NCBI RefSeq assembly: GCF_000002075.1
Contig: NW_004797514.1
Coordinates: forward strand, 624,451-688,450
Reading direction: 5' to 3'
Length of the DNA stretch: 64,000 nucleotides
DNA from: Aplysia californica
Taxonomy: Eukaryota
The notes beneath the pieces were generated by a model, which was not told where the DNA came from, ran no database searches, and worked only from the letters and a program-made list of their open reading frames with translations. Below, piece by piece: positions 4,107 through 61,883 of this stretch. Position numbers and translations under genes: made by a program. Position 1 is the first letter of the stretch; each line of letters starts with the position of its first letter.

Positions 4107-4239
4107 GTTACCAAAAAGAAAAGCCAGTAAAACAGGGAAAAAGAGTGTACCTTGCAACTTTTTATCTAAGCAAAACTAGAGCCAGTATTCCACTCCTGAA
4201 AAATGTCCAGTTTCCAGAAAAATACCAACAGAAGCATAG

Positions 4240-9208: not shown

Positions 9209-9310
9209 TCACATGTGTTTCATTGATCCTCCGCGAGGAGATTTGGACCGGCTTTCTCTCATCTTTGAAACTCTCTCTTTCATCTGAGCAAGCTGTCTCT
9301 CTCTCTCATC
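9209..9310 (-). CDS. Terminal coding exon E49 (DERERQLAQMKERV...GGSMKHM*)
   Basis: ttttctccag| acceptor, in-frame TGA at 9211-9209; minus-strand AATAAA at about 9014-9019 and 8946-8951. Confidence 0.83.
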   Translation of the reverse strand, partial: DERERQLAQMKERVSKMRESRSKSPRGGSMKHM

Positions 9311-12300
9311 CTGGAGAAAAAAAGAGCAAATTAATATGACCACAATTGCAAGAAATTATCTAATTTTGTTTATCTAATTTAAAGAGAGGCTCATAGACTA
9401 TATGTGTCACAACGCGGTGGAATCAGGCACTCGTCAATTTTGGGGCATACAGAGTTATTGGTATTGTCTTAAAGCCTATCCATTTGCCTTTCTCGTGATG
9501 AAAAAAAATATCCATTTATCTTGGATACAAGTCAAGATATTGGCGATTGAAGGTGGTGGGGGTCATCTTGTTTCAGAAGTAAAATTAGCGAGAAAATGGG
9601 CGCCAAAGTTGAGTTGTTTCCTTAGTTGAGAGTCCATGGAAACTGAAAATGTACTTCTTTTATGCCTTAAATCAACGTTTTTCAGTGTAATCCGCACCAA
9701 AATGTGTTCTTTAATGGGCAGGAAAGGTGTTGAACTAAAACACAAAAATTCAATTAAAATTCCCAAACCTGCGGAAAAATGCCAGTTTCTTGACTTTCAT
9801 TATTTTAACGAGTGCCTGATTTCCCCACATTGCCTCACATAAGAATAATAATCAGGTACTTAGGCCTATAATGGAGGATACTACAGAATCAAGAGTGGAA
9901 GATATTACCATAAATCACTGATACCATTAAAGTCACGGCAGTTTTAAATTCATATACATATCACAAGAATGAAGCAGAAAGATGAATTAAGAAGGTTACA
10001 ACTTTTCTTTGAATTTCTCTGACTGTTTATTTCACTTAAGCTTCCTAATTAAAGAAGGGTCAAGTTATTTAAGTTTGAGTAAAAATAAGCACATTGACAT
10101 GATAAGCATCCTGTAGTGTACTGGTTTGAATTCTTGATTACACATTCTGAAACTTGGGTTGTTTGGGGGATTTTTCAAAGCTTTGAAACCACTTGGTAGG
10201 GTACTGTGGGTGGTGGACATTGAAATCTAAAGTCCCATCCTTTAAAAAATATTACAACATTGAAAGGAAGGTGTGTTGAACTTATACAAAATCCAATTTC
10301 GATTTTTGGAGAAAAAAAAAATGGAATAGCAAGTGTAAATGTGGACATTGAAATCTAAAGTCCCACCCTTTAAAAAATATCACAACATTGAAAGGAAGGT
10401 GTGTTGAGCTTATACACAATCCAATTTCGATTTAAAAAAAAAAAAATGGAATAGTAAGTGTAAATGTTTTATGCCCCCATCGACACAATTTTGGACATTT
10501 AGGAGACAAGTTTCTTCAACCCTGCAACATATTCTCCTTTAACAAACAAGAAAAAACTTACCCTCTGGGATTGCTGAAGTACTGTCTTTTGCCTCTCACC
10601 CAAACTGTAGAGAGCTGCGGCTTCATTCTCACGTTTGCTGCTTCTGAGCTCCAATTTCCGTTTAAGCTAAAAGGAAGAAAAACACCCAAAAAATCATCCC
10701 ACCTCATCTGAACTACAGAAGAAAAATTTTTAATAGAACATCCATTGAGATTGAAACTTCTAGAACATTTCATAAAACAACATTTCTGCCATGCTGAATC
10801 CACCATTTCCTAACAATGTACGAGTATGTCGAGTGGTGAGTAAAAGTTGTCACACTTTATTTTTCTAATGCATATTGTTCAACTCATTGATTTAAAAAAG
10901 GGCAATACAAATGCAATTGAACATTATTATTATTTTTACTGATGTATATGACAGACTAGTAGCAGAAATATTTGAGGGACATAAGTGCTAAAGTAAATAT
11001 ATTAGGAAATCATGAATTTGTGAAAGTAATTAAATAAATCACCTCACACGAAAGGTTATAATTTCTTTACCAAAGTCTCCTTTTTTCTAATCCCTCTTTT
11101 AATGTTTTCTCCTTTTCTTTATTTTCCTCTTTACATTTCCTTCTCTCTTAATAAGTCATATCTGCCATGCTGAATTATTCAACCTTCACAATGACAACTT
11201 CAAACAAATTCATGCTGTTATGTGTAGTAGTTGCCTTTATCTGCTTGAGCTAGTGAAAATGGATCATATCTGTAAACAAAGTGTAGAATTGACCCTATCC
11301 ATACGTTGCGTTTTACTATCGTATCCATATGACGTGGGGCACTCTGTGGCATCACTTTCCAAAGAATAGATTTACTCGTTAATCCGATCTGTACGCTTTG
11401 CAGAGCAGTCTGTCAAAATGATTTTTTGAGAAATACAGAAAGTTTCAAAGAGATCTTCGTACTAGAAGTATTCTAAAATGTGAAGAATACAACCCCGGGG
11501 GTACAAAATGACCCCAGGGCCTACGGATAGGGTTAAGAAAGAGATAAACAAATAAATCAACAGAAGATCCTCACCAGTTCCTCCTGTCGAGACTGCTCTG
11601 CAAAGATCTGCTGCTGTCTCTTGAGGCCTTGTTGGACCACCTGGTCGTACATCTCCTGTTTCTGCTCGTCACTGACCCTCACGTCCACCACCGTCTTCTC
11701 ACGGGTCAGGGAAAATGTTGGTGTCTGAAACAACGAGGTAAACTCATATACAACATGGACTGGTAGGTTGGGATATGGTAAAATAACATGATGCGCCCAA
11801 AGACATTCTAAAGAATCGCTGGCCTGACACCATAAGAAATGAACAGCTATAGGAGCAACCAAATCAACATGAAACAGATATTGAAATCAGTAACAGAAAA
11901 TAAAAGTGGATTGGACACACCTTCAGAAAACTGAATACAGATATTACCCACAAAGATTTAAGGTAAAATCCACACAGAAAGAGAAAGACAGGAAGACCTA
12001 AAAGCACCTGGAGGAGGGACTTGTCTTTAGAGCTAAAACAGATGAGATATAGTTGGACAGTGGTGGAGGCTATATCCAAAGGCAGAAGTAGATAGAGAAC
12101 TCTTGTTTCTTGGCCTTTTCTACAACATGGGGTGAGAAAGGACAATGGCCAAAGACATGAGGACAGAAAGTGTCTTTTACACTGGGGACATTACACTTGT
12201 GCACTTTACATGAATGGAATGCATAATATTTTTTTTTAAAATGTTTACAGTTGCCTACTTCATCTCAAAGAAGCAGCCAAGGTGGCCTTCAAATGAGTTT

Positions 12301-26900: not shown

Positions 26901-29900
26901 AGGATTTATTTGTGTACTAATTCCAAAGTTTTTCAACCAGATTCTATCCCTACAGTGTGTTAGGTACACTATTAATAAATAAATAATGAACTATACACCA
27001 CTAGGAAACGTTACCTCAGAAATGGCAAAGCAGTACATGTGGTCAGCTTTTGGGTGTAGTTGTGCAGCAAACTAAGCTATTTTACATTCAATTAAATAAA
27101 ACTTTCTTTACTACATAGTGGTTGAAGGAAGTCACTGAAAGATCTTATTTCTTCTCTTTTCTTGTCTTCTATTGTTGCTGTCTATCAATCTCACTTTTTC
27201 TTGCACTTTATCATATCCATGTGCTTCTCTTTATGCAATTAAACAAAACCATACTGAGATTTTTTCAGTAAGATTAAAAGAACACTGAAATCTAAATTCA
27301 AAACTGTATTGACACAAATCATACAAACCTCAATAAGTAGTTTGTCTCTCATTGCGTCATACTTCTTCTCTAAGGCTTTCACAACCTTATCATCTTCTTT
27401 TTCCTCTTCTGTCTTTTCTTCCTCATCCTCTCCCTTTCCTTCCCCAAATATATCTTCCTCATTGGCGAAGGTAAACAAAATTCCTGCTACGTTGTCATAG
27501 CGTTTATCTTCTAGCTGTTTTCTTTGGGAATTCAGAATCTGTTTCTTGTGTTCATTGTCCTGTGAATAAATGAAAATGTGAAACTGAGGACACCATTATA
27601 CTGTAGGAGGGAAGACATTTGTTAGACTCATCAGGCATGTACGTTAGTACAGAGGCAGAATTAAAAGAGAGAGTTGTTTCTCCCCTTTTGGGCTAATCCT
27701 CCATCTCCCCATCAGACAGGACACAATTGTCTCTCCTGGCACTATGCCTCACCCACACATGTCAAACAGGATTCTCTAAAAACAAATTCTAACCTCAGAT
27801 GTAGCACCAAAAAAAACACAGCTCTGTTTGACTTGATCAGTCAGTTATTCATTACACTAACAGTATACGCTTTATTACTGTTCCCATAACTCAGTAAATC
27901 AGACAGGCAAAAAGCATAAGGAGTTTATCCAACACCCCAAAGTTGAAATGACTGCGAAGTCCCCATAGATATTAAAATTATTGAGGCCAAAACAAACAAT
28001 CCAAAATTTGGGCTGACAGGTTTTTGTCACAATAAAAATTCTGTGAAATAAAAAAAATGAAAAAGATGCAGCAAGGTGAAAGGAAATGATATTAAAAGAA
28101 ATTATTTCAATTAACTTCAATAACGCAAAATTTATGGATCATAATAATTGTCTAATACATCTTGTATAAAAAAATCTAGATTTCTTGATTTGTCTGCAAA
28201 ATCTGGAACCCCTGATTAACTCTTTATCTCTGAAGGGGGGGGGGGGGGGACCCACTATGCCGGGCCCTGTTTCGGTACTAAATCTTAAACACAAAAACGT
28301 CACTAAATTGATTATAAAATCAAAACAAGTGAACCTAATTTGATAGTTCTTCCTCTAATGAATGAACTTCCGATAAAAGAGACCTGTTTTTGGCAACTGT
28401 TGAAAAGTAATTTGATGTCAACGTCGTCATAAAGGAATGGGCCCGAGATGCCGTCAGCGGCTCACCGGCACAGCAGTTCCGACTGCAAGCCGCTGCCAGA
28501 GATAAAGAGTTAATGTACTGGACAAAGAGAAATACAACTGACCACAGTAGTAAGAGTTTCCATCATTTGTGCAGCCTCTCCATCTTGCTTCATCTGAAGC
28601 TCCGCCAGTAGTGCGACCTTGACATCTTCATCCGAGGCCAGCTCTCCATCTGCTTGCATGTCCCGCTTCTTGACCTCAAGGCTCAGAACTGCCACTTCCT
28701 GCACACAATGTAAACACAAATTGGTGCAACATTAGTTCAGTTCGTTTTATGCTGGACTACAGAGTGGATGGCCCGGGCTCGAATCCCAAATGGGTTTTTC
28801 TGAACATAGATAGTTTTAATGAGTTTTTAAAGCTCTCCATCCATTTGGCTCTGTCCAATTAAAGATGGACATTAAATTCGGAGGTCATACCTCTTAAATA
28901 ATTTTAGTGCTGATATTATCACCCCCATTTGACCCTTAAACACTCATAAACCTTCTCTGCTTTCCAAGAAAGCATACAGTGCAAGCTGCCATTTTACTGG
29001 AACTAAAACATTAAGTAGGCCCTAATAGAAACTCACAGCTAGTATTTTCTCTCCATCTTCCTTCTCCCCAGAATCTGAATTTCTCCACAATTCGTACAAC
29101 TCTTGAGCAGCAAGCAGCTTCATCTTGAGCTCATCATCCGTCAGGACACGGACTTCATCTCGCTGCTCAGACTCACTGCCTTCATCTAGAAGCTGAGGAC
29201 AAAATTAAGATACGATAAGATGAGATAAGATGAAACAAGACAAGAAAAGACAAGACAAGAGTTTAATGATCTCCGCAAAGAGAAATTTGCTGAGGCATAG
29301 TAAATACAAATACAAAATTTGTAATGTTTTTTCTAACACTTAATGTTTTTTAGTATCTCGGGCTGTTTTGCATAATTCATGCAAGCTTAGGATTTATTTG
29401 TGTANNNNNNNNNNNNNNNNNNNNNNNNNNNNNNNNNNNNNNNNNNNNNNNNNNNNNNNNNNNNNNNNNNNNNNNNNNNNNNNNNNNNNNNNNNNNNNNN
29501 NNNNNNNNNNNNNNNNNNNNNNNNNNNNNNNNNNNNNNNNNNNNNNTTGTAATACAGCTTCTATCTGAAAGTTAAGGAAAAGATAAAGATCTAACATAAA
29601 GATTCCTCATTCTTCTGCTTTTATCTAACAGCTGTGGATAAAATGAACATATTGTGCAAAATTCTTTGTTTAACTGACTTAATTTGTGAGTTGTAGATAA
29701 AAAAAACAACCATATTTATGGTGTACAATAGGCTAACTCTTCAATTTTTGTTTTTTTCTCATCATTTGAATCAGATGGTCTCTTTTCCCAATTGAAAGAT
29801 TTTCAAGAAACCAGCTGAATGGTTAGAAGATAACACCATTGATACGCAACATACAGTACTTTAAAAGCTCCCTAAAAACAGAAGATGAGCCATGACAAGT

Positions 29901-38900: not shown

Positions 38901-41900
38901 TTATAGTGAAAGAATATGACATCAATAGAAAATCTACCATTTGATCCTTATGTCGATTTTTGGCCAATATCTCCATTTTTGGATTGTGAAAAGTAACTCA
39001 TTTTGTCAGTATACCTCACATTTGTCTCTTTCTAACAATTTTTATTAGTGGGCGGCCCTTGTGAGCTTGAAATCCCCACATTACACCAATATTACCATCA
39101 GTTTTCGCCAATAATTCTCCACTCACCTAAAGACTCTGTCTGTATTCTGTCTCTCTGCTAGACCACACACAAGGCTGGCAGTCACAAAGTCTCCCACAGA
39201 AGACACCAGCTGACACTCCCACTTGAGTTTGTTCTCCAGTAACTTCTTGTCTGATTCCTCCGGAACTTTTTCCAGACATCCTGACAAATAGCATTTGATT
39301 AGTTTGAATAACGAAGAGCACATTTTAAGTAAATAAAATGGCCATGTACATAAAAATCAACTGCATTGAGAGAAAAAGATCTTACAGTCATGTGCAGTTA
39401 CTCTCTGAGCTCAATCATTGGTAAGAGAAGTTGTTGTTTTTTTAGTTAGTGTTTTACGGCACTTGCAACACAATAAGGTCATATAAGTGCAGAAGACTAG
39501 AGGTGTTACAAGAGAGTAACAAATACAAAAAAGAAGGAGGGGAGAAAAAGACAATAGATGTTTGATAAGAAAGAAGAAGCAGCAGCAAACCACACCAGAG
39601 CAACCGCAAACCACCCACTTGGTAAGAGAAGAAAGAGGAGAAACACTGTGTTTCCAATAGGGTTTATATACCACACAACAGTGAGTTGTTCCATTGAGAA
39701 ACCAAAGATACAATAAGTCATGAAAAGTGATTTAGAGGAACAAACCTGCGATGTAGTTCTTGACAAAGTCCACCTCAGCCATGTAGCGTCTGTGCAGGAA
39801 AGATATTGTTTCTCCATTTCCCTGGTCATCAGGATTTAGTCCTTCATTTTCTTGAATGGGGTCTTCACTTCCTGAATAGGTGCAAAAAGTTTTGTTCATA
39901 ATTGTTTCCTGTAAGTTGAAGCGGCTTCTCAAATTACTAATCTAAAAAAAGCCACATTCAAATCAAATATTGACTTTCAAGAAAGAAAATGTAGACAAAA
40001 CAAGACAGACTACCACATTCTTTTCACCGTCCTTAATCTTTCTATCTATAAGTGTCAATGTTTTATGCCCCCATCAACTCAAAATGATTGTTTGGGAGGC
40101 AGGCAGCTTAGATTATGCTTGTCACTGCCACCCTATTCTGAGTAGGATAAAAGATATCTGTAATTAGACAGATATCCCCCCCAAAAAAAATTCTGTACTC
40201 AGAAATAAAAAATAGAACTCTTGTTGTCTGCATGCAATTTCAAAGAGCCAAACCGCAACACCACAGACATCAAGCGTTACAAAAAAAAAGTATTACCAGT
40301 TGAAATTTTGGTAAATATCTCAACATATTTATGCAACTAGCTAACACCATATAGTGCCTCCTCTTTAGTGTTATAAAATTGACGCTCACAAACTCCAAAG
40401 TAGAACAAAATCATGAATACAAGCTAGGAGTAGACGGGCACTGACTAAACCACAAGGGAAATTAACAAACTTGAAGTAAATGGGATCCCAGTTTATCTTC
40501 AGGTAAGATTTTCCTTTCAGCTTGGCAGCGAGTCAGCGTCAAGCACTTTGCCCTTCAAAGAGACACTCCATGTAAAGAAGTAAAAAATAAACTTTTAACT
40601 TTTTCAGTGCCCTTTCAGACAATCGTTGAATTAGGACTTGAGTGCCAGATCATCAGAAACAAAGTTGCGCTTCATTTAGCAACTCACGTGGCTTTTAAAA
40701 CTTTCAGTTAATAGAAACTTTATATCTCAGTTATTATTCCAAATAGTAAACAGTTCCATGCAAAAATAAAGTATTGACAAACCTTTTTGCACATGGGGTA
40801 AAACTCCTACTTTTTTCCCATTTAAGGCATGGAACTGCTAGGGTATATGCTGGGATTTAGGGGCTGGCATTGAAATGGTTAAAAATAAATACACAGAATA
40901 GGACCAAGGAGAGAACACTGTACTGACCAGCCCACACAGCCGACGAGTACTGTTGCCGACTCATTCCACTCAGGTAAGGAAGGGTGGGCTTCAAGGTAAA
41001 GGCTGGGGTCAGACATGCCGACAGACTGCCACTGTCGCCTGTGATGAATCATAATAATAAGAATAAAAGATCAGGTTCAGTGAGCCAGCTTGAACTGGAA
41101 GAATGCTCAGTGTTATTTGCAACAGAAAGCATACATCATCAGTGTCTGACTATAGCTCGTATCAGTAAAATTAGGCAAAACACTTTTTGTCTTCAATTAT
41201 GTTATTAATAACCTTATTTACAATTGGTGATCCTAAAATATATACACACTGATTCATCTATGACAAAATTCAATTAAAAAATTAGAAATGTGCACAAAAG
41301 GATTAAGAGAGTTGTCTCTTTGCCCTGACATGGCTAATTTGGACATGGCACCATTGATACACACATCTTTTCTAAAATTATCGGACTGTGAGAAAAATGG
41401 TCACTTTTAAGGACAAGCGGGCTAACCCAGGTTTCGGGGGTTTCTAGAAAACTTGACCTACACCAAAAGTGGGCATTGTCTTATCTATAGGAGAAATTTG
41501 GTTTCATTGGTGTGTATATATTTGTTCGGTTATTGAGAAACTCTCCTTGTCTTTTAAAGAAACTGAATAACAGGCAAAAACTTTACCTTTGATTTTCTCA
41601 AAACAGCATTTTTCTGGATAGCCCCCTTGTGCTTAAAAGCGACCAAATGGCGTGATAACACAACTGAGACCAACAACAAAAATTACAATGGTGCTGTATT
41701 GATGTAAAGTGCCTTGAGCCCATTTGACGAAAGGGCGCTATAGAAATCTGCTGATCATGGTTATCATTTTTGGAAATGCAAAGTCCTAACCTTCATTCCA
41801 CAACGCAGATTCTTTAGCTTGGAAAGTGGAAATGAGCTTGTTCTTTTGCTTCTGTCCCATTTTGGCCCACTTCAGCTTCCCTTGTCTCTGTGACAGGCAC

Positions 41901-42219
41901 TCATCAATCAGGTGGTCTCGGAGCTTTCTGTACTTGGCATCCAGTAACTGCAGAAGGGCAAGAGGAATATTATTCAGTGCGAAAAGAGCATGTCTGATAG
42001 TGGGGGTTTTTGTTTTGTTTTGGTAAGTGCTTTACGGCCCTCGCAACGGCACAAAGTCATATGAGTGCACAGGACACATTAAACATTTTCAGTTTGGTAG
42101 GAATTAATTTTGAATTTTGCCAGGGTGGCGGTGGAAGAATACTCTGATAGTGTGTTTGTTTCTGAGTTTGAGTGTGAGTGCATGTGTTCATGTGAGAGTG
42201 AGTATGTGTATATTTGTAG

Positions 42220-42272
<53 letters not shown>

Positions 42273-45200
42273 TGTGAGTGTGTGTGTGTGTGTGTGTTCA
42301 TGTACCTGTGTGCATTGAAAGTGAGGTTATATTTGTCTAAACATGCACATGTATAAGTATTTGCAGATATTTTTGTATATGTTAATGTACTTGCATTGAT
42401 GGGAAAGCAGTAGGGTGTTATGATGGACTTTGTGAAACTTTTATTTAACAATAAAATTGTATCTGGTACATGATACCTATAACGTTTAACATAGCGATCA
42501 CAGAAGTCATTCAGTTGTCCTTCTGACCAAATATTTAATCTTTCTTTCTGCATCCCTTCCAACAATTATCTTTTAGAATATTCATCCCAGAAATGAAGTA
42601 GCATTCTTCACAACTTCACAATATATTGGATACCTACAATCTACAATAATTTTCACTGTTTGGCACTTCTCTTCTTCTGCTTCTTAGCTTTTCCAGTAGA
42701 CCTTTCTGCAATAAAACACCCTGTCTTTGGCCATTCTCTCTGACTGAGTTGTTTTGGTTCTAAGCCAGGTTTCTATATCCTGTTCCCACCAATGTTAGGT
42801 CTTCCCTTTTCTTTCATGTCTTTTACCTCTGCTTCAAGAATATGTCTCTCAAGTGAATCATTGTGTTCAACTCTACATAACCATAATTATGTACTGTACA
42901 AAACACTTCAGTGACTTTGTTAATTAAAATCCTTTAAAAAAAGCACAATTCAATGTAGTTTTCCTAGGTCACAAGAGAAATGGTGAAACTGTCAAGTCAT
43001 AGGTACAAATATAAAAGTAGAAGCTCAGCTATGAAGTATGATTAAGGTGTGAATTGGTCCATAGGTGCTAAAAACATTTTGCCTTTTCCCTGAGGCTGAA
43101 AAGTTTTGGCTCATCTACACATCAAGCAGGTTTTTTTCCCATTTACCTCTTCTTAAAGAACCCACAGTACCTCCAATTAGTATCCCATCCCTTTTCGAAA
43201 CAAACGACTGTGATTGGGAATCCTAAAATCATCGAACACGCACTTACTTGATCAAAATCAATGTCTGAGGAACCTCCGTCGAACTTCATGAAAACTTTCA
43301 TGACTAAATGACTGTGGCTGTTTTTCTTCGCCTTCTCCTCTGCCCAAGCTTTTTCTTGCATCTCATGGCCATTCTGACAGAAAAGAAATGAACTTTCAAG
43401 AGTAAAGGGAATTCAGTTTGAAAAAATGCAGGATATTTATCTACAAAAAACAAATATAACCCTTCGGACCCCATCACTAGTTTCAGCATCTATTTGTAAA
43501 AGGTTGATTTTTAGCATACAAAACACCACGCAAAATGTTTTTGAATTAAAAAGCATATAATAATAGATCAACGCTAACATTAAAAACTAATCCCCCCCCC
43601 CCCAAAAAAAAATTTTGTTAAATTGCCACACAAGTAGTAAAAGAATCAAATTGATTGGTCCATATTTTTCAAATCCCAAAACATCAGCATTTCTATATTT
43701 CCCACATAAATTCCGTATAATCGTGTTATTATAATAAAAATCCCTACCAGAGTCCCCAGCTGGTTCAAGATTGTTGCCAAGTCTCGGTCTTGCAGATCCT
43801 GCAGCTCAGCCAACAGCTGTACGACCACTTCATCCATGAGGACAGCGCGGCCGCCATCCATAACCATCGCAAACTTCTTGCTGGCACAACGGATGGCACC
43901 AGCTTCCTCCAGGATGGATGTGTGCTCCTCCTGATTGGCTGGGTGAATAAATGAAGACATTGTCTACTTATCACGTCCACTTATCACTCCCATTTTGACT
44001 CAAATCTGGGTTAAAAAATTTAACATCGTCCTTTAAATTGTGGAGTTCTTTCTTAAGAATCACAAAAATTAAACACAATAAATTTAATTATTTTGTTATC
44101 AAGAGGAATATGTAGGCAATAAATTAAAGCAGCTTGATCAAACCTTATCAACTACAATCAGTATCGACCAAGGGTTAAAAACACACAAAAATATAGAACG
44201 TTTTACAAGCACATCCCCATGTAAACGGTTCCCACCTCCTCCCTTTCTAGAAAAGAAACACTACTCCACACCTTCTCAAAAGACTGAAAATCAAAACAAA
44301 GCTATAATGTGCCTATCTGAGGTGTCAGTAGTCTAGTTTTAGACTATAGCACTCATAATAGTGAGATTGCGGGTTCGGGGGTTCAATGCTCAGCTTAGTC
44401 CAATACTGTATCCTTGGGAAAAGCATTTTACACAAATTTTCCTGATTTGTCGCTGTTATCGAAGACAATTGTTCAATTTGGAAGTCCTGCCTCTTGAACA
44501 ACTTTAGTCTTGTAAGGAGTGTTAACCCTCTATAATTTTGCAGGTTTTTTCCACTTTTTTCTGAGCCCATCTACCCATTGCTATTCAAAATAAAAGAAAA
44601 TAGTTGGTATTTACATAAATGCTAAACATGGAGGAGATGTCTGGAAAGGGAAATGAGCGAGATGAAGCTCACTTGGAACGAGCTTGGAAGGATGGCCCAG
44701 GACAGAGATAAATGGAAGGAGCTTGTATGTGGCCTATACCCTGCCAGGGGTGAAACGCACTGATGAGGATGATATAAATACTGACCTTTGTCGTCCAGAT
44801 CCATATTCTCTCTCTTGTCCTGCAGTTCCTGCATTCTCTTCCTGCCCTGGTCCACAGACATCACAGCCGCAGCCTCCAACAGCTCCTCCATGCCTTCGTC
44901 TTGGAGCAAATTCAGCATGACTTCCCGCTCCTTGTAGTGCCGTCTCAGCACAGCCCGCATGTAGATAGCCTGCATGGTCCTCTCATCATCTGAAAAAAAA
45001 AAAAGGGTCGTTTTGGGGTCAGCATCCGTTTTATTTTCCTGTTGGGTCTTAGAATAGTTTTGCAGTTAACAGAAGCGAATCAATATTTTTTTATGCGTCA
45101 ATCATCTTACTGTATGTTTTTGTCTTGTTTTTTTGTAGTTGTTATTTTATCAAGGTTTGTTTGTTGTTGTTGATCATTTTGTTGAGATTTTGAGGGGTTT

Positions 45201-48200
45201 TTTTTCTTTTTTAGGGAGGAGGGGTATGAGAAAACCTGTAGTGCTAAAGTTCAGACAATGATATTGAAGACTTTATCAGAATTCCCTATGAACTGAGAGT
45301 AGGGGAATGTAAACCACTACAACAACAAAAAAATAATCCTGAAAATAGATAAAAATACTTTTCAGGGATTCTTCACTTCAACTGTTTGCTTCATTTACAG
45401 TTATATAACTGCATCAATACTTTTCTTTGAGCTCTAAGGACTGCTGAAATATTCACAAAACTCCAAGATTCCTGCACTTTATCCAATTTCAGTCCAAAAA
45501 ACCTGTACTGAGTTCGTTATCAACAGTAATCTGAGAGCCCTCAACTTTACCCGCACCACTGCCACATACCCAGTTCGACAAAAACATATCAGAAAGAGTG
45601 CATGTAGTACTATCTGACTCTTACTTTCATTGGACTTGTCTTTTTCCTCTGGTGGTGGTTTTTGCTTTTCCCCTTGGTTGACACACTTTTTCCGTAATGT
45701 AGCCCTCTTCTGGGCCAGCAAAATTTGTTTTTCCCTGTCACTCTTTGACCTGTGAACACCCATTTATCAATTTGATCTAAACAATTATCTTAAAAGTATA
45801 TCATACAACAAATATGTTACTCACAGCGCAGTAAAGACTTCAACGCCAAAGTAAGTACAAGTGTCAGTAGCCAAACGGTCAACGTTTGAGAAGAAGATAT
45901 TATTCAAATTAGAATTCAACTTAGTACATTTTTTAATATTCTACAATAATAAAGGCAAACTAACATGGGGCTGAACTTTGCTAACATATGGAGGTTCAAA
46001 GTCTGAAACTCCCTAAAGTCCACCTTTGATCGTTTCCCTCTCAGCCCAAAGTCCTCATGGGAGATCAATAGTCCACTTTCACAGGTACCTACAAATGCCA
46101 TAAACATTTATGCCTACCGTGTTAACAAAAAAGAGGGTAATTTATAAGCTATATTTGAGTCATGAAAAAAAAATGCAAATTTTATATGGAAGTCATCAAA
46201 CTGTTCATTAAAAGAAATCATCAAACCTTCATACTCCATTAAATAAGTAAAACACTTCTAAACACTTGCACAGTTAATGTTTCCATTACATGAGTAAAAC
46301 ACTTATATTATATCAAAGTTACCATTACATAAATAGAACACTTACAATATTAATGTTACCTCTTATATCATGTCCATAGCAGGGTCAAATTGACTAAAAT
46401 ACAGTTAAACCTGTGCAAGACAACCATCCATTGTCGAAGAGGAAAGTGGTCCGTTTGAAGTGTCATTAAGGATCGATAACAACCTGGATCGAAGAGTCAT
46501 TATAATATAGAAAAAAAAAGCAAGTGAAGAAGTGGGAAGTGGTAGTTTGAACAAATGATTGTCTTAGACAGGTTTTCATTAGAGCAGGTTTGAACACATG
46601 TTGAAAAGGCCTTAAAACAGCATCAATCACAAAGAGAGAAGAGGGATGACTAACCTGCCAGACAGAGCCATCCCAATTCTTTCCAAGAGGCCCACAAACA
46701 GCAGCGCAGTCTCATGATCTCTCTCAGCGCTGGCAGCAAACTTCTCCATAGCAATTCTGGTCAGCTGACCATGCTTGCTCCGCAGAGTTGACCCCTTAAC
46801 CTCCTCCGAGCGGAGCCAAGACACGAGAGAATCCTGCTCCTGGTCAAAGCGGGGAACTAGGTCAGCCAGCAGATTGATGGAGCGTGACTCCGATGTCTGA
46901 GGCGGAGATGCTGTATACGTGCAAGATGAGAATAGAACAACAGTCCAAATTATTCAAGACAACCACCCACTATTTGACCAATTAAAAAAATTCATAATTT
47001 ATGAATGCACATAAAGGATCAATTAATATTACACATTAGTGATCAAGCATTTCTCAATTAAAATTTATTCCACACCTTTAACAAATGACTTCAACATTCC
47101 ATAGCGGCACAAAGTTAATGTCTACAAGGATCAGAGAAAGGACTGATTCAGACAACAACTTACAGTTCGGAAATACTTTGTCTTCTCCAACAAGTGTAGG
47201 CAGCAATGCTAAAGCCTGTGGAATAATATAAACATTTTTTTCAGTATCTAAACTGCACATTGAAAAAAAAAACATCCTTGTCATTAACAAATTTCAAAAC
47301 CATAAACAGTGACTTGAAACAGGGACAGAGATCTCAGCTTCCATTCTATTATCAGGTCTGTAACTTTTCAAGACATTTCTGTGAATCCGTTACAATGAAA
47401 GAAGTATGAAAAGATTTTCTTGTAAGTAACCCCTTTGGGCTATCTCCACTCAAACCTTCCTGATCCTCACCCAAGCTGGTCATTTCGTTTCCAAAACAAA
47501 TTGTTTCCTTATCTTTGTTTCTTCACTTCAGTGAGGGTCAAATGATTTGGTCTTCAAAATTACATCACTATTAATATCTCTAAAGTTGCACTATTTTTGT
47601 TTGAAGTAGCAGGAGTCAATTTCAAATCGGTTTACAACAAACGTTTTGAGCAGTAAGAAAATATGCCCCAAATATAAGTCTCTCAACCAGGCCAACAAGA
47701 TTCACTTCAATACAAAAGATCAACTGAAGTGGTGCACTGTACAGAGTCAGAGATTCAAAATACCAATTTTTTTTTTACAGATACTCTGACACCTGCTGAG
47801 AGAAACAGAAAAAAATAAACACAAAAAAGCCTAGTTGGAGCTTGGAAAAGGCAAGATAAATGGAATAGCATTACAACGATATGAACCATCCTTCATTACA
47901 GTGGTTCACTGGTAAATAATTACAAATCATTTCCTTAATCAGGGTATATCCCATATTTGCATCCAGTATTATTTTAGAATAAGCCCATACCATGACTGTG
48001 GTGAATACTTTATGTCACATCATCCACCAACTTTGTTGTTTTAGTTGAGGTTTTACGGCGCTCGCAACTGCATAAGGTCATATGAGCACCAGAAGAATAG
48101 AGGTGTTACAAGAGAGTGACAAACATAAAAAAGAATAAGGGGAGATAAGGACGATAGATGTTTGATAGGAAAGAAGAAGCAAACCACACCAGAGCACCCG

Positions 48201-51200
48201 CCAACCACCCACATCCACTAACTGTAAAAGCCCTTTTTCTCGCGCACAGCTGATATGACAAAAGAGCCAGAGTGTCACAATCACTGGCAATGTTTCAGGC
48301 TACAAATTTCTTTGAAAGAAAAATTATTCCTTGAATCAAGTTTCAACATAGCCAAAATGACCTAAATTACTTTTAAAAAGGTGTCATATTTTCAAATAAA
48401 CGTCCAAACTAAGAAGCCAGTGGACCATTAGACCATTCACCTGCGACCGAGGCCCAATGAGGGCTGACATCTGTTCCAGAAGCCCTTCTCCTCTCAGTCT
48501 CTTCTCCTCCTTCCTTTGGCGTAGTATCTCTCTCTGTTTGTTCTCTTTCGACAACCTGCAAAGGATAAAAATAAATCGAATTGCAAAGACATACAATGTA
48601 TGAAAGTCAAAGTGAACGGCAGTTTGTAAAGGTGACCAAAAAATTGCCTTTCTCAACGTCACTTGAAGGACTGAGATGAAAATTTAGAATTAACACACTG
48701 GCCAAAAGTGTAGTTTATGAGTAAAATAAGACTCCTATCAGAGAGGATTCAGGACAATTATTCTTACTTTAACTTCAACTGTCTCAGCTTCAGATTTAAC
48801 ATAAAACCTGTCAGATATTTACACATACCCCTTCCACTCGGATCCCATTTTATCCACAAGTCCAAAAACAAAGACCTGGTCTCTGAGAGCCTTGTATTTC
48901 CCATCCAAAACCTTAAGGAACGCTGTGTCTTCAGCACTGAGGTCAACGCAACCTAAGATGACGTAGGCGATGCTGTTGAAGTGTTCCTCCTTCGTGGCTT
49001 CTATCTCACTCAAAACGAGCCGAGTCACTTCTTGTGCATTCTGAAAAGAATTTCAAAGAGGGGAAAGTTAATTCGTNNNNNNNNNNNNNNNNNNNNNNNN
49101 NNNNNNNNNNNNNNNNNNNNNNNNNNNNNNNNNNNNNNNNNNNNNNNNNNNNNNNNNNNNNNNNNNNNNNNNNNNNNNNNNNNNNNNNNNNNNNNNNNNN
49201 NNNNNNNNNNNNNNNNNNNNNNNNNNNNNNNNNNNNNNNNNNNNNNNNNNNNAGCAAATCAATATAATGCATCTTTTTAAAGTATGGTCAACTTTTTGCC
49301 CTTTATTTGCCAAAAGGATATAATAAGTGTAAATGTTTTTATTATCATTTATTATCATTGACAAAGAGCCATCCTCCAAATATATGGAACATTACATAAT
49401 GCATTGATACGTCTGCAAGGAATGTGAAAGCATACTACGTCTATTATATATGTGGAGTACACGAGAAAAACAGAAATAGTCACAAACTGAAAATCGTGAG
49501 GGTTCAACGCTTGTTGACTTATAACTGTATTTCTGTTTAACTGTTGGTTGATTATTGTGGTAAGATTTTCCTTTCAACAAACATAGCAATAAACCAATAA
49601 TCAAACAAATATGAAGTTTTGAGTCCACAAGCTTTTAAAATTGACACCCTAACAATTTCCAGTTTGTGACTATGCTCATTTTTGCCGTGGACTCCTCATT
49701 TATATGTATACAATATGTATGTATTGGTATGTCTACAGAGCATTAATGTGAAGGGTGCTGCCAAAATGAGTTACTTCTCGGATTCGAGACCTATAGAAAT
49801 AGAAGTGTCACGCTTATAGGTGAAGTTTTTACAATTCAAAAGTATAAAATAATAAAAGGCTTATTATGCTCAAAGAATATGGCATAAATAGAAAATCTGC
49901 AAATTTGACCCTTGAGTCGTTTTTTGGCCAATATCTCCATTTGTGGATTGTGAGAAGTAACTCATTTTGTCCGCATGCCTCACATTTTTCTGTTTACCTA
50001 CCATTTAAAAAGAACCAAAGAAAAAGAAAAGAAAAGAAAAGCGACGTTCAAATCTTTTCACCTTTTTATGAATTTCACTGACAGTCTTTTCAAATTCAAC
50101 CTCTTGTCTCTGCTGCAGGTCAGCCAGAACAAACGACATGACAGTCGAGTCAGTGGCATTGTGGTCCTTGCTCTCAACATCAGCACGGCTTTGCTCAAAG
50201 TACAGTCCAGTGGCTGTAATATTGTGCGTTGAGAAAAGTAAATGTTTTATTCTCTAAAAAGCAAGAACTAATGGGTATTTTGAAATAATTCATATCGTCT
50301 AAAATATGAGCTATTCATTCATTGTAAAGCGCTCAGAGCCTGTGTACTTTAATCAGGGATGAGCGTCATATAAATGTAATTTATTATTATTATTATTATT
50401 GTCAGGTGTGTGAGAATGCCATTGTTTATATGTCTATCCAATGACTATTCGTGTGTGTGCGTCTGTGTATGTAAATGTAAGAGCATGTGTGTGTGTTGAC
50501 CGAAGCATAGGCGTGTATGTATTTGCCATGCTGAAGCAAATTTCTCTTTGTGGACATCAACAAATTATATGTTCACTTATCTTTAAAAGGGTAAGAGGGA
50601 ACATTGTGAAGGCTTGTGGAACAGAACTGATACAGGGCTATAATCATCACTGTAACTTCCCTATAATAATGACAAGAAATAATAAATTCTTAAACAATAA
50701 ATTGATAACTTAAACTCTGCTGACACTAAAGGGGTCACTGGTAGTTGCCTGTATTTAGATGACATATTGGCATATCCAAAAAAGATTCCCAAGGTGTCAC
50801 AGAGAGCATAAACTTTTAATAAAAGCAAACATTTTAACAAAAGCAAACAGAGATTTCTATGTAGGTTTTCTTTCTGCCAAGATTTACATAACTTTTTTTG
50901 TACTTCAATTTATCGGTATAAGGTTATACACTGTAATGAAAAGTAGTAACACGTTGGTGCATAGCACAAAAAGAGTTAAAGTCTAATGTCAGAGTTGTCT
51001 TTTTAAAAACCTTACTTAAAAAAACCAAAAGCTTTCTTAACACTTTGCGGTCACTTGGCGCAATAATGCGCCGGAGGAAATTATTCGTTCCGGTCACAAG
51101 GTGCAGTTCTGCACAGTCTCCTGGCAGAGTGACCAGATGGGTTATTGTGTACTGCTGTCTGTGCGACGGCAAAATGGTAAAACTGCAAGTACAAAGTACG

Positions 51201-54200
51201 GTTGAAATTGTCCAAGATGGCAAACCATTGTCGAGGACAATAGTAGTTGACTTAGACAGGCTGGTGTCTTAGACAGTATCAGCATGATATTTTAAAAAAC
51301 CTAGGGGAGAAAGGGAAAGTGGTTGTTTGTACATGTGATTTTCCTGGACAGAAATGACCATCAGAGCAGGTCCGACTGTACTTGTTGAGATAAAAGGGTT
51401 GTAAGACGGAAGAAATGTCACTAATTCTAATGCTTAACCATACCAACCTTCTTGAAGCAGTTTGTGATTCACCGACGAGTCAGAATTATTCATCATCTTC
51501 CACTCTTCTCTTTGATTCCTCAAAGTCCTGATCCGAAGTTTGCGCTCATCAGGAGACATTTTGGCAGCTGCTTCAAAAGATGACTTGCTGTCGGGGCCTT
51601 GCAGAAGGAAGACCATGGCCTGTAAAAATGAGTTTGAAACTGGTTATAAATTTCACTTGCAGTTCTAACAATTCGTCAGCCGGTTGGTCAGATGCATTAA
51701 GACAAAAATTCAGACTTTCAAAAAAAATTGCACTTTCTTTATCTGTGGTATTGATTGCATGTGCACAAAAAACATTTTGTTGAAATTCAAATTCTGCATG
51801 ATGAAAAAAGCAAGAAAAGATTCATTATTTGGGTACAGTTTTTAACAGAATAAAACAGTTCTGTTTATTTTCAATCTCTTAAAAAACTTTGCTTTCCTGG
51901 CCTAAAACAGTTGCACAACTTGTCAGTGATTTATCAAGAAGGAACATGCTACAATTATAGAAAGCGTTCACCCGTAAACAATTTTGAAAACAAAGAATTG
52001 CTCTAGATTGCTACCTCTCTCTCTAAAAAGTAGCGCTGCTCCATTTCTTCCACAAGTCTCTGCTTGATGCCAGCTAATGCTAGACTCTGCAGACTGTCCA
52101 GGTCTGGGGCGGCGGTAGATCTTTTGATTGGTCGATGTCCTCTTCGTGACTCCAGTCGTAAGTTCGCCAGAATTTCACTACGCTGTCTGTCCCAGTCATA
52201 CCTGGATGTTTAAACCAGGACAAATAAAAAGAAATATAAAACATCTTCATAAATACTTGATGGATGTCAGATACAAGGAGGACATTTTCTGAACAAATTG
52301 AGACTAAGTCTTAGCTATTGTGAGGAAGAAAGTTGATAATCTACATAATCAAACAAAAATATAAGAGCCAGGGAAAAAATGTCAGAAGCAAAACAAAAAA
52401 GGTCACATAAAAAAACAACTAAAATCATGTCATACGTTTCAACCAATAAAGGTATTCAAAACAAACCTTTTAGGTTTGTATTCCTGCTTTCGTTCAGCGA
52501 GCCCCACAGAAATGGCAGCTGATGTGACAAACGGCTCCAACTGAAGGAGTCGCAACTGCCGCAGCAGATGCCAGTACGCCAGGGCTAGCACAGCAGAGGG
52601 TGGGAGAGATGAAGAGCTCTGATGGAGAGAGTGAAGAACTGCATCCCTCTCTGCTTTGTGCCGCATGTCCAGCTGAGTTAAGATGGCGCCACATGAACGG
52701 GGGCCTGCATTAGGAATATTACAACAGAACATTTATACATGGGCCATCAGCCTAATACAGACATACCCACAATTTTACTCTTACTAAATAAGTTAAAAGT
52801 TCAGAAAGTCACATCAGGGGTTTTTTTTTACTTAATAGTTCAGAAAAATATTCTGAACATGCACATCCCAGTGATCACTCTTTAAAGACTGGAGGCATTT
52901 AAAAAAACAAACGTTGCATATTTCAAAGCATAATCATTAGCTGTGAATCCCTCTGCCACACGGAAAACAGTTTTCGACCCGTTGTCTCAAAGTGACCAAT
53001 GACACTAATTGGAATCTTCATGTCTCTAATTGCATGCTGTGGACACACACATTTGCTCATTTTCCCAATCACTGTTGTCACTGCTTACAAAGATTAATGA
53101 ATATAACCTAACAGCCCATCAAAATTAAATGTCTTTAAGGCTCAGCAAAGAATGAGCCCGTTCCCACTGTCTTTTCTTATCGAACTCTTCTTGTAAAAAG
53201 GCACAGGATCATCGAACTCTTCTTGTAAAAAGGCACAGGATCATCGAACTCTTCTTGTAAAAAGGCACAAGATCATCATACTCTGCAAGTCCTGACAAGG
53301 AGTTGAAAGTTCATGACACTTTCCCCAAGGACCCAGTAACCATTGGGCCCTTGTAAGAAATGTCTTGCTTTCTGCGACTATTTCCACACATACACAAACA
53401 TACACACTCACACTCAACAAGGGAATTCTTACCTTTGAACTCAACCTACCCTAATTTCAGAGCCCCACGAACTCTTTGACCCACCCACCACCACTGTCAA
53501 CGCAATAAATATATTACCTGCCACATCTCTCTTGTATCTTTCTGCCAACTCAGCATCTACTTGCTCATCAGTTCTCTCCTCAGTTTGCAACTCTGAAGCC
53601 AAAGACTTAAACTTTTCTTTCCGATTTGCTTCTGCCGAGTGCAGGTCACCGATCAGGCCTAGCAGACTCATGGAAAGTTCCACTTTTGCTCCAGGCAAGT
53701 CATCCACATTCTCTGCAAGACTTTTACTCTTGATTGAAGCTGTGACAAGGCGTTTGATTTGCTGAAATGTCTCAGATTTCTCACTGTCCATATCTGAAGC
53801 AGAAGACAGAATTGTCCTTTTAAAAAAAAGAAAAACAGTTAAAATTGTCCACGGCAATTGCAACACAGTTAGGTCATATAAGTACCCGAGATTAGAGGTA
53901 CTACTAGTTTGTAACATTCAAAATGAAAGAAGGAAACATAAAGACTATAGATTGATAGGAAAGAAGAATAGAGCAAACCACAATAGAGTGCCCATTAAAC
54001 AACCACAAAAATAGAAAAGGACGTACTGGCAGCAAAAGAAGCCATCTCCACGATGACCTTGTCTTGCAGGAGAGAATATTTCAGGTCCAGCGCCTCCATC
54101 ACATTGCTGGTGGTCACTGTGTCACTCAGCTTGGACATCTGCTCGTCTCCTTCAGTCTGGCCCAGACCGTCGTCATGCAGAAGTGAGTCCAGGCCGTGTT

Positions 54201-61487: not shown

Positions 61488-61883
61488 TTATGTCCCATCT
61501 GTGTTGATATTATATGTCCCAATTGTGCTGATATATGTCCCATCTGTGCTGATATATGTCCCGTCTGTGCTGATATATGTCCCATCTGTGCTGATATATG
61601 TCCCGTCTGTGCTGATATATGTCCCATCTGTGCTGATGCAATATGTCCCATCTGTGCTGATGCAATATGTCCCATCTGTGCTGATATATGTCCCATCTGT
61701 GTTAATGCAATATGTCCCATCTGTGCTAATATATGTCCCAATTGTGCTGATATATGTCCCATCTGTGCTAATGCAATATGTCCCATCTGTGCTGATAAAT
61801 GTCTCATCTGTGCTGACATATGTTCCATCTGTGTTGATAAATGTCCCATCAGTGTTGATATATGTTCCATCTGTGCTAATGCA
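61488..61883. repeat. 21/24-bp minisatellite (atatgtcccatctgtgctgat, with or without gca)
   Basis: About 18 units by inspection. Confidence 0.92.

What the first reader, a model, noticed from the sequence alone, without database searches (positions are those of the whole stretch)
9209..57407. About 2,600-aa protein: EF-hand head plus five tandem super-repeats of about 400 aa, of a module I cannot assign to a named domain
Seen: the spliced exons give the same ordered motif series five times. LDxKYxxL[RQ]D occurs in E4, E10, E18, E25 and E33. WxxLSxxERQ..LRREG is clear in E10/11, E26 and E34. IL..L...H..E+.A[LV]L recurs. F.SAA...GL[AS]ER occurs in E6, E13, E21, E29 and E37. It is followed by D/E+xRQ..LA, L.++H..ER..L, H..IL.EA, and LA[DE]LQxxQ (E9, E16, E24, E32, E41). 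Spacings from summed exon lengths are 385, 387, 422 and 467 aa. The N-terminus has up to four EF-hand-like loops (DSSRKGYVTIDQ and DYSGSGLIALKD are clearest). Known: S100 fused-type proteins such as trichohyalin also pair EF-hands with long charged repeats, but those repeats are short and lie in one exon. Inference: an independently built Ca2+-responsive scaffold or filament protein that pipelines would probably label only as trichohyalin-like or uncharacterised.
Basis: partly seen in the sequence, partly recalled or inferred. Interest (0 to 1): 0.8.

Follow-up and report, generated by a model that had tools for sequence, protein, structure and literature searches.

The report
Giant EF-hand protein, five ancient repeats
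This is one real 48-kb sea-hare (Aplysia) gene for a protein of about 2,580 residues, with a calmodulin-like head and five ancient copies of a roughly 400-residue helical module that no domain library names; the family runs from comb jellies to sea squirts, is mislabelled "trichohyalin-like", and has no known function.

Summary
One gene lies on the minus strand from 57407 to 9209. It has 48 readable GT-AG exons plus one exon hidden in the gap 54422-55064. The coding sequence is 7,746 nt (2,581 aa) with a single final stop.

Every other assembly gap lies in an intron between exons whose phases fit. Those exons are also adjacent in RefSeq Aplysia californica proteins that map residue for residue onto the window. 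RefSeq splits the gene into a 2,037-aa model and a 532-aa "NST1" model. Full-length collinear orthologues of 2,500-2,930 aa argue for one gene.

The five units of 384-476 aa are homologous end to end. Profile-profile E-values are 1e-51 to 1e-87, against 0.15-0.7 for reversed controls. The units share two intron positions and cluster by position across Cnidaria, Placozoa and Bilateria.

The head is a four-EF-hand, calmodulin-like domain. Only one loop is near-canonical, and only in about half the species.

Pfam, PDB sequence profiles, Foldseek and VIA-align assign nothing to the units beyond generic helical bundles. No vertebrate, arthropod or nematode homologue was found. S100-fused, spectrin and EVC2 membership tests failed.

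The most likely role is an intracellular modular helical scaffold with a calmodulin-like regulatory or docking head. Function is inferred, not shown. No read-level RNA evidence was obtained.

The parts
9209..57407 (-). Whole coding span of the gene: 48 readable exons plus one in a gap; 2,581 aa; about 294 kDa without the unread part; pI 5.35
55522..57407 (-). Head, aa 1-150: calmodulin-like domain of four EF-hands (exons E1-E3). EF1 loop DSSRKGYVTIDQ; EF3 loop DYSGSGLIALKD.
   Evidence: Pfam EF-hand families in 10 of 16 members; PDB profile hit to calsensin, 1.9e-6; AF2 plus Foldseek/VIA
48947..54126 (-). Unit 1 (aa 236-642), exons E4-E9 and the start of E10
43283..48944 (-). Unit 2 (aa 643-1026), exons E10-E17
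35820..43280 (-). Unit 3 (aa 1027-1419), exons E17(end)-E24 and the start of E25
27412..35817 (-). Unit 4 (aa 1420-1854), exons E25-E32 and the start of E33
19217..27409 (-). Unit 5 (aa 1855-2330), exons E33-E42
9214..19214 (-). Conserved C-terminal tail (aa 2331-2581), exons E43-E48, with family motifs REKTVxDVxVS and LGERQKT
57201..57407 (-). E1 (ATG at 57407)
   Evidence: P0114 maps exactly
56040..56214 (-). E2
55427..55587 (-). E3
54422..55064 (-). Assembly gap hiding one exon (about 80 nt; phase 0 in, 2 out). Not filled.
   Evidence: P0114 aa 182-208 have no counterpart in the window
54027..54208 (-). E4 (LDxKY of unit 1)
53518..53793 (-). E5
52467..52704 (-). E6 (FxSAA..GLAER, unit 1)
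52015..52201 (-). E7
51448..51619 (-). E8
50062..50213 (-). E9 (LADLQ, unit 1)
48829..49040 (-). E10 (LDxKY of unit 2)
48441..48555 (-). E11
47164..47215 (-). E12 (52-nt exon missed by my ab initio model)
46655..46910 (-). E13
45625..45749 (-). E14
44786..44989 (-). E15
43748..43938 (-). E16 (LAELQ, unit 2)
43248..43373 (-). E17
41791..41947 (-). E18 (LDxKY of unit 3)
40928..41038 (-). E19
39746..39871 (-). E20
39127..39280 (-). E21 (GLAER, unit 3)
38162..38279 (-). E22
37156..37330 (-). E23
36473..36666 (-). E24
35722..35928 (-). E25 (VDGKY, unit 4)
34977..35100 (-). E26 (WNRLSEKERQ...LRREG)
34408..34521 (-). E27
33108..33280 (-). E29 (FDSAA, unit 4)
32229..32448 (-). E30
31390..31545 (-). 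E31' : upstream copy of the duplicated 156-nt exon; not used in RefSeq model P0114
29037..29192 (-). E31: downstream copy of the duplicated exon; used in P0114
28543..28698 (-). E32 (LAELQ, unit 4)
27329..27559 (-). E33 (LEKKY, unit 5)
26577..26739 (-). E34 (WNRLSELERQ...LRREG)
25879..26048 (-). E35
24697..24822 (-). E36 (last exon of RefSeq model P0114)
23745..23839 (-). E37 (FESAA, unit 5). RefSeq 'NST1' model P0198 starts at an internal Met here.
22444..22574 (-). E38 (alternative acceptor 9 nt upstream, at 22583, used by P0198)
21936..22075 (-). E39
20669..20861 (-). E40
19781..19923 (-). E41 (LADLQ, unit 5)
19214..19400 (-). E42
17533..17553 (-). Optional 21-nt micro-exon (present in P0199, absent from P0198)
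14917..14987 (-). E43
13610..13798 (-). E44
12656..12793 (-). E45
11575..11724 (-). E46
10562..10666 (-). E47
9209..9310 (-). E48 with the stop codon TGA at 9211-9209

Best explanation
SHOWN
- The interval is one protein-coding gene of Aplysia californica (window = G000 contig C244). It encodes an intracellular, acidic, all-alpha protein of about 2,580 aa.
- The layout is: an N-terminal calmodulin-like domain of four EF-hands (about 150 aa); a conserved linker; five tandem homologous units of 384-476 aa; and a conserved charged C-terminal tail.
- Each unit carries the same ordered motif series: LDxKYxxLRD; W..LS..ERQ..LR.EG; F.SAA..GLAER; DR.RQ..LA; KH..ER..L; ILEEA; LLADLQ..Q; and, in the family consensus, EGW.DN.A.
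- The gene belongs to a family found across animals that is effectively single-copy here. Its five units were already distinct before Cnidaria, Placozoa and Bilateria separated.
- The units arose by duplication of a multi-exon block. Two intron positions recur in all five units: one of phase 0 after the LADLQ helix and one of phase 2 after GLAER.

INFERRED
- The protein acts as a modular, elongated helical-bundle scaffold or spacer of fixed length. This is similar in principle to spectrin, alpha-actinin or talin rods.
- The calmodulin-like head probably works as a docking or regulatory clamp on a helical target, either in the same protein or in a partner.
- Ca2+ (or Mg2+) control through EF-hand 3 is possible in Aplysia. 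It is unlikely to be universal in the family.
For: One gene:
- The exon chain is in frame and uses only GT-AG sites.
- RefSeq P0114 (2,037 aa) and P0198 (532 aa) map residue for residue onto it.
- E36 and E37 join cleanly in phase 0.
- P0076, encoded on a second contig (C587), spans that junction.
- Orthologues of 2,500-2,930 aa align collinearly over nearly the whole length. Examples: Lingula, 32.6% over 2,322 aa; Patella, 29.8% over 2,476 aa; Antedon, 29.5% over 2,513 aa.
- Several orthologues sit on intronless Logan contigs of about 9-10 kb that read like full-length transcripts.

Repeats:
- Self-similarity within Aplysia, and five units collinear by MAFFT with nine motif blocks.
- hhalign gives 100% probability, with E 1e-51 to 1e-87, against 0.15-0.7 for reversed controls.
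- Unit lengths are conserved to within about 5% across phyla.
- Units cluster by position in the tree: U1 support 100, U2 89, U5 99.
- Intron positions and phases are shared between units.

Head:
- Pfam EF-hand_7 and EF-hand_6 hit 10 of 16 members.
- The family profile hits calsensin at 1.9e-6.
- The AF2 model has pLDDT 83.5 and pTM 0.61. Foldseek gives probability 1.0 to calmodulin, troponin C and SCaMC. VIA gives Z 8-8.8 at rmsd 2.4 A over 73 aa.

All-alpha bundles:
- DSSP on both models shows only helices, with pLDDT 86-94 for residues 400-580 of unit 5.

Distribution:
- Ctenophore, placozoan, cnidarians, molluscs, brachiopod, annelid, nemerteans, echinoderms, hemichordates, amphioxus and tunicates.
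Against: - There is no direct evidence on function, location, partners or Ca2+ binding.
- RefSeq annotates two genes at this locus, not one.
- EF-hand ligands are degenerate in many species.
- The unit 5 model has pTM of only 0.41 and contains a 124-residue helix that may be an artefact of modelling the unit alone.
- Structural matches to bundles are generic (Z <= 7.4), so the rod analogy rests on secondary structure and repeat regularity alone.
Confidence: 0.6

Rival explanations
1. The locus holds two or more separate genes, as RefSeq has it: LOC101847194 (2,037 aa, E1-E36) and a 'stress response protein NST1' gene (532 aa, E37-E48).
For: Both RefSeq models exist on this same contig. P0198 starts at an internal Met in E37. 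I have no read-level junction evidence for E36|E37.
Against: E36 ends and E37 begins in phase 0 with good splice sites. The split falls in the middle of unit 5. Every orthologue is one collinear protein of 2,500-2,930 aa. P0076, from the second contig, crosses the junction. Redundant contigs (C587, C3599) carry copies of the 3' half, which would confuse read-based model building.
Confidence: 0.07
2. Same gene and architecture, but its role is specifically ciliary or centrosomal. It would be a fixed-length structural ruler or linker of the apical ciliary apparatus of ciliated epithelia or sperm, and the EF-hand head would be purely structural.
For: The phyletic pattern fits: present in ctenophores, placozoans, cnidarians, lophotrochozoans, ambulacrarians, amphioxus and tunicates, and not found in arthropods or nematodes. 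Unit lengths are strictly conserved. EF-hand ligands are degenerate.
Against: No vertebrate homologue was found, although vertebrates keep motile cilia. No expression or proteome datum could be tied to this family. The 'trichohyalin' that marks oyster ciliated cells is a different gene, LOC105338222. The axonemal EF-hand structural hits are generic.
Confidence: 0.2
3. The 'super-repeats' are a by-product of biased, coiled-coil-like composition (rich in E, K, R, Q and L) and not true domain homology.
For: 35.8% of residues are charged, and pipelines call the protein trichohyalin-like.
Against: Reversed-sequence controls give E 0.15-0.7 against 1e-51 to 1e-87. Alignments run end to end and in register. 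Non-charged residues (K-Y, W, F.SAA, G-L, H) are invariant. Intron positions are shared. Units cluster by position across phyla.
Confidence: 0.02
4. It is a true relative of trichohyalin and the S100 fused-type proteins, or of EVC2/limbin.
For: Database names; an N-terminal EF-hand followed by a charged repeat region.
Against: No S_100, EVC2_like, Spectrin or TPH match appeared at E <= 1 in any of 16 members. The head has four EF-hands and is calmodulin-like. Repeats are about 400 aa over 6-10 exons each, not short peptide repeats in one exon. There is no transmembrane anchor.
Confidence: 0.01

Closest known systems
RefSeq/UniProt predicted 'trichohyalin-like', 'EF-hand domain-containing' or 'uncharacterized' proteins of 2,500-2,930 aa. 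Examples: Littorina saxatilis P0105, Mizuhopecten OWF34681.1, Lingula XP_013408861.1, Nematostella P0085, Trichoplax TRIADDRAFT_52404, Branchiostoma XP_066283910.1.
   Same: These are true orthologues. They are collinear over nearly the full length, with the same head, five units and tail.
   Different: None is characterised. The Aplysia entry is split into P0114, P0198 and P0076 under three unrelated names.
S100 fused-type proteins (trichohyalin, filaggrin, hornerin, repetin)
   Same: An EF-hand head followed by a long, highly charged repeat region.
   Different: Their head is a two-EF-hand S100 domain and their repeats are short peptides in one exon. Here the head has four EF-hands and is calmodulin-like, and each repeat is a folded helical unit of about 400 aa spread over 6-10 exons. 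No S_100 match was found.
Spectrin superfamily (alpha-actinin, spectrin, dystrophin)
   Same: A working analogy only. Both combine a rod built of tandem helical-bundle repeats with a calmodulin-like four-EF-hand domain whose loops are often degenerate and which clamps a helix.
   Different: There is no spectrin-repeat or CH-domain match. The unit is about four times longer, the EF domain is N-terminal, and no fold match exceeds generic level.
   Same: A large, helix-rich animal protein.
   Different: No Pfam EVC2_like match in any of 16 members at E <= 1. It has no transmembrane anchor, and it has an EF-hand head.

Membership tests
Five-repeat EF-hand giant family found across animals (labelled 'trichohyalin-like' in RefSeq) | Full-length collinear similarity to family members | tested here: met
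   29-36% identity over 1,600-2,500 aa to scallop, Lingula, Patella and Antedon; 43% to Littorina
Five-repeat EF-hand giant family found across animals (labelled 'trichohyalin-like' in RefSeq) | Five units, each with LDxKY...W..LS..ERQ...F.SAA..GLAER...KH..ER...LLADLQ | tested here: met
   (4-6 matched stretches in full-length family members of about 2,500-2,750 aa)
Five-repeat EF-hand giant family found across animals (labelled 'trichohyalin-like' in RefSeq) | Conserved C-terminal tail (REKTV.DV.VS, LGERQKT) | tested here: met
EF-hand superfamily (calmodulin-like four-EF-hand domain) | Paired helix-loop-helix fold and sequence profile | tested here: met
   Met at family level: EF-hand_7 31.1 bits in Lingula, hits in 10 of 16 members; calsensin 1.9e-6; Foldseek probability 1.0 to calmodulin and troponin C. 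The Aplysia sequence alone stays under Pfam's cut-off (20 bits against 25).
EF-hand superfamily (calmodulin-like four-EF-hand domain) | Canonical Ca2+ ligands at loop positions 1, 3, 5 and 12 | tested here: inconclusive
   EF3 in Aplysia reads D-x-S-x-S-G-x-I-x-x-x-D, which is acceptable. Only about 7 of 15 species keep such ligands. EF1 has Gln at position 12. EF2 and EF4 are degenerate.
S100 fused-type proteins (trichohyalin) | N-terminal S100 domain (Pfam S_100) | tested here: not met
   No S_100 hit at E <= 1 in 16 members; the head has four EF-hands
S100 fused-type proteins (trichohyalin) | Short tandem peptide repeats encoded in one large exon | tested here: not met
   Units of 384-476 aa, each split over 6-10 exons
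Spectrin superfamily | Three-helix spectrin repeat of about 106 aa (Pfam Spectrin), CH domains | tested here: not met
   No Pfam hit; no spectrin chain among the top Foldseek or VIA rows
EVC2 / limbin | Pfam EVC2_like domain | tested here: not met
TPH (trichohyalin-plectin homology) coiled-coil proteins | Pfam TPH domain | tested here: not met
   No hit at E <= 1 in 16 members

The most novel reading that the evidence does not exclude
The roughly 400-aa unit is a new all-alpha domain family. Its five ancient copies would make a fixed-length ruler or linker of the apical or ciliary cytoskeleton in early animals, read out by a calmodulin-like head. The protein would then have been lost independently in vertebrates and ecdysozoans.
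Probability: 0.25. Interest if true: 0.75.

Novelty: new variant of a known kind. Interest (0 to 1): 0.55.

Why it matters
A protein of nearly 300 kDa has kept its length, its five-unit plan and even some intron positions since before cnidarians and bilaterians split. Yet it has no domain annotation, no name of its own and no known role. It is missing from the main model animals: none was found in vertebrates, arthropods or nematodes.

Its misleading labels already lead to false inferences. 'Trichohyalin' annotations have been read as wound closure in Hydra and as hair-follicle programmes in Hydractinia.

Defining the family and its unit gives two things. The first is a clean profile for annotation. 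The second is a testable candidate for a conserved structural element of non-vertebrate animal cells.

Tried and rejected
RNA evidence:
Local scripts kept using the window file.
- The public protein P0114, which covers the same exon, was a row in alignments A5 and A6 used. The second Atlas search was limited to residues 1-1500 to stay clear of it.
- The look-up of sequencing runs lists unclassified runs holding 0.3-0.34 of the sampled words, against an exon share of about 0.26. That hints at transcripts but proves nothing.

Spliced model:
- The spliced model was never sent to a search tool. Searches used single exons by reference or public protein ids. The joined model lived only in local scripts.

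Alignments not used:
- A1 (FxSAA exons) was too weak. A3 (mixed exons) was misaligned by MAFFT.

Searches that added little:
- My first ab initio run over-called tiny exons.
- The word-index profile search and the single-unit search added only family members and the RefSeq 'NST1' fragment.
- The ESM Atlas gave nothing above noise.
- Foldseek and VIA-align gave only generic helices or bundles for the units.
- The bacterial 'WD40' hit P0025 matches only the non-conserved start of the profile, and I take it as chance.

Literature:
- Accession and LOC searches found nothing.
- 'Trichohyalin' mentions refer to other genes or cannot be mapped. The oyster ciliated-cell marker is LOC105338222, not this family. 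Hydractinia Tchh1/2 are LOC130657211 and LOC130662747, which I could not link to XP_057296641. The sea-urchin spine gene LOC121409999 could not be mapped.
- One search was badly designed and wasted.

C-terminus:
- No further C-terminal exons were found below 9209.
Full report
SOURCE AND STRAND

The window has 37.8% G+C, CpG observed/expected of 0.50 and twelve N gaps. It is contig C244:624451-688450 of a 927-Mb assembly in 4,332 contigs. RefSeq proteins of Aplysia californica map onto it residue for residue, so the organism is that sea hare.

The gene therefore runs from 57407 down to 9209.

GENE MODEL AND GAPS

I built a splice-aware dynamic-programming model from codon bias and generic splice-site matrices. 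With a realistic intron penalty it gave 47 exons, no phase break and one stop.

I then compared it with the RefSeq models.
- The 2,037-aa protein LOC101847194 (P0114) maps exactly, with a unique GT-AG solution at every junction. It agrees with my model at 960 of 960 residues across P0114 residues 741-1700, about E13-E30.
- It corrected two exon borders, added a 52-nt exon (E12) and removed a spurious poly-Glu exon.
- The 532-aa 'stress response protein NST1' (P0198) maps exactly onto E37-E48 and equals my C-terminal 200 residues.

The refined model has 48 readable exons, a CDS of 7,746 nt and 2,581 aa.

I tested the gaps first, as asked. Five of the six listed gap stretches, and the sixth too, lie in introns whose flanking exons are adjacent in the RefSeq proteins and compatible in phase.

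A seventh gap, 54422-55064, hides one exon. About 27 residues of P0114 have no counterpart in the window, and the phases (0 in, 2 out) fit about 80 nt. I left it as X.

The stop at 9211-9209 is probably the true end. No homologue tail matches further downstream, and scallop and Mactra end at the same point.

THE REPEATS ARE REAL

Within the Aplysia protein, chunk-wise BLASTP gives significant hits at offsets of 362, 387-411, 506 and 750 aa. E-values reach 1e-29 between units 4 and 5 and 4e-14 between units 2 and 4.

MAFFT aligns the five units collinearly, with nine recurring motif blocks. The LDxKY anchors are at aa 248, 655, 1039, 1432 and 1867.

I cut the five units out of a 16-species family alignment and compared them with hhalign. 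Probability was 100%, with E 1e-51 to 1e-87 over about 390-410 columns for all ten pairs. Reversed-sequence controls gave E 0.15-0.7.

Unit lengths are conserved across phyla: about 405-430 aa for U1, 385-425 for U2, 390-427 for U3, 410-435 for U4 and 440-525 for U5.

Two intron positions recur in all five Aplysia units. One is a phase-0 intron after the LADLQ helix, at E9|E10, E16|E17, E24|E25, E32|E33 and E41|E42. The other is a phase-2 intron after GLAER, at E6|E7, E13|E14, E21|E22, E29|E30 and E37|E38. The units therefore arose by duplication of a multi-exon block.

RELATIVES

A profile of the five LDxKY exons, given by reference, was run with HMMER against 1.84 billion cluster representatives. 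It found 66 proteins. The long hits were 2,500-2,750 aa with four to six matched stretches.

Their names are 'trichohyalin(-like)', 'uncharacterized', 'EF-hand domain-containing', 'autophagy-related protein 11' and 'golgin'.

A word search with the amphioxus member added sea urchins, sea cucumber, acorn worms, tunicates, Owenia, nemerteans, many molluscs, corals, Nematostella, Hydra, Clytia, Trichoplax and Mnemiopsis. No vertebrate, arthropod, nematode, sponge or unicellular hit appeared.

This absence rests on the full HMMER scan plus two capped word searches. It is 'not found', not proven absence.

The Aplysia model aligns collinearly with these proteins almost end to end, including the tail. 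Several family members sit on intronless contigs of about 9-10 kb from Logan, JGI or ENA that encode the complete protein, as full-length transcripts would.

In a tree of 76 units, the units group by position and not by species. Support is 100 for U1, 89 for U2 and 99 for U5, and label shuffles never come close. The five-unit plan is thus older than the cnidarian-placozoan-bilaterian ancestor. The three Mnemiopsis units cluster together on long branches, so the ctenophore case is open.

WHAT THE PARTS LOOK LIKE

Pfam finds only EF-hand families, in 10 of 16 members, and nothing in the units or the tail. A family profile against all PDB sequences hits only EF-hand proteins, over profile positions 1-115. 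The best is calsensin at 1.9e-6.

AlphaFold2 of head plus unit 1 (the Nucella fragment with a 22-row family alignment) gave pLDDT 83.5 and pTM 0.61. It shows four helix-loop-helix motifs with the short paired strands typical of EF-hand pairs, followed by about 20 helices.
- Foldseek places the head on calmodulin, troponin C and the SCaMC regulatory domain, at probability 1.0 over 140-160 columns.
- VIA-align gives Z 8-8.8 at rmsd 2.4 A over 73 residues for each pair.

AlphaFold2 of unit 5 (P0076) gave pLDDT 75 and pTM 0.41. It is all helical, with a 124-residue helix and a confident C-terminal bundle (pLDDT 86-94).

Neither Foldseek (no hit at E <= 1e-3) nor VIA-align (Z <= 7.4 for unit regions) places the units beyond generic bundles and long helices. 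The tools warn that a 600-residue model can hide a domain match. So this means 'no fold assigned', not 'new fold shown'.

CALCIUM

The EF1 loop (DSSRKGYVTIDQ) has Lys at position 5 and Gln at position 12, and Gln is the family norm. EF2 and EF4 lack the ligands.

EF3 (DYSGSGLIALKD) has acceptable ligands with Asp at position 12. Amphioxus, Trichoplax, Lingula, Owenia, Lineus and Littorina also keep them. Scallop, Nematostella, Hydra, sea urchin, Clavelina and others do not.

Ca2+ responsiveness is therefore possible in Aplysia but is not a conserved property of the family.

INTERPRETATION

Shown: one gene, its architecture, the homology of its units, the antiquity of the plan, and the absence of a named domain.

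Inferred: this is an intracellular protein, with no signal peptide or membrane segment visible in the sequence. It is acidic (pI 5.35, 35.8% charged residues). It is built as a string of helical-bundle units of strictly conserved length, with a calmodulin-like head.

The closest working analogy is the spectrin/alpha-actinin design, in which a rod of helical repeats is paired with a calmodulin-like domain that is often Ca2+-insensitive and clamps a helix. Membership in that family fails, as it does for the S100 fused-type proteins, EVC2 and TPH.

A ciliary or apical-cytoskeleton role would fit the losses in ecdysozoans. It is unsupported by data, and the loss in vertebrates speaks against it.

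ANNOTATION STATE

RefSeq splits the gene on this contig into P0114 (E1-E36) and P0198 (E37-E48). It also carries a third partial model, 'golgin subfamily A member 6-like protein 22' (P0076), on contig C587. That contig holds a second copy of the unit 5 exons. A small contig, C3599, holds a copy of the unit 4 LDxKY exon at 97% identity. Exon 1 is unique in the assembly. These look like uncollapsed haplotype pieces, which may explain the split models.

LITERATURE

I found no paper on this family. The label 'trichohyalin' in invertebrate papers points to other or unmappable genes.

LIMITS

- I have no RNA reads.
- There was no AlphaFold DB or HHpred search.
- The gap exon was not read, by rule.

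VERDICT

The gene is a member of an uncharacterised family found across animals, whose repeat module has no name. Its function is open.

Noticed in passing
window 31390-31545 and 29037-29192 (with 32012-32231 vs 30107-30474): A 156-nt exon is duplicated in tandem. The copies are 93.9% identical over 180 nt and differ by one residue (Asp vs Glu). The duplicated upstream intron pieces are only 82-85% identical, so the copy is old and the exon is conserved. RefSeq P0114 uses only the downstream copy, and orthologous units have one copy. This fits mutually exclusive exons. Two assembly gaps lie between the copies.
   Followed up: partly
window 17533-17553 (-): A 21-nt micro-exon with good splice sites lies between E42 and E43. 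It is present in the older protein version P0199 and absent from P0198. Orthologues have 7-14 extra residues at this junction.
   Followed up: partly
window 22575-22583 (-): E38 has tandem acceptors 9 nt apart (ccag|CCTTCTCAG|TGAG). P0198 uses the upstream one, which adds three residues.
   Followed up: partly
G000:C587:490920-501923 and G000:C3599:754-1942: Second copies of the unit 5 exons (on C587, the source of the partial RefSeq model P0076) and of the unit 4 LDxKY/WxxLS exons (on C3599, 97% aa identity). The C587 copy has an extra E37-like exon about 3 kb away. These are probably uncollapsed haplotype contigs, but a real partial duplication is not excluded.
   Followed up: partly
window 58899-59648 (+): An intronless ORF of 249 aa lies head to head with the gene's 5' end. 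It has an N-terminal membrane anchor, a short coiled region and a C-type lectin domain (Pfam Lectin_C, 2.6e-20).
   Followed up: partly
window 61489-61877: A tandem array of a 21-nt unit (17.8 copies, 85% matches; higher-order period 66 nt). It gives long spurious ORFs on both strands.
   Followed up: no
window 48056-48299, 39414-39731, 22715-22963, 13860-14049, 3954-4175: Copies of one short interspersed repeat (SINE-like) lie in introns of the gene and downstream. They were seen as cross-matching pseudo-ORFs in the self-comparison.
   Followed up: no
window 55315-55422 (-): A GAA/GAG microsatellite in intron 3, next to the 643-nt gap, reads as a poly-Glu ORF. It fooled my first gene model into calling an exon.
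   Followed up: yes
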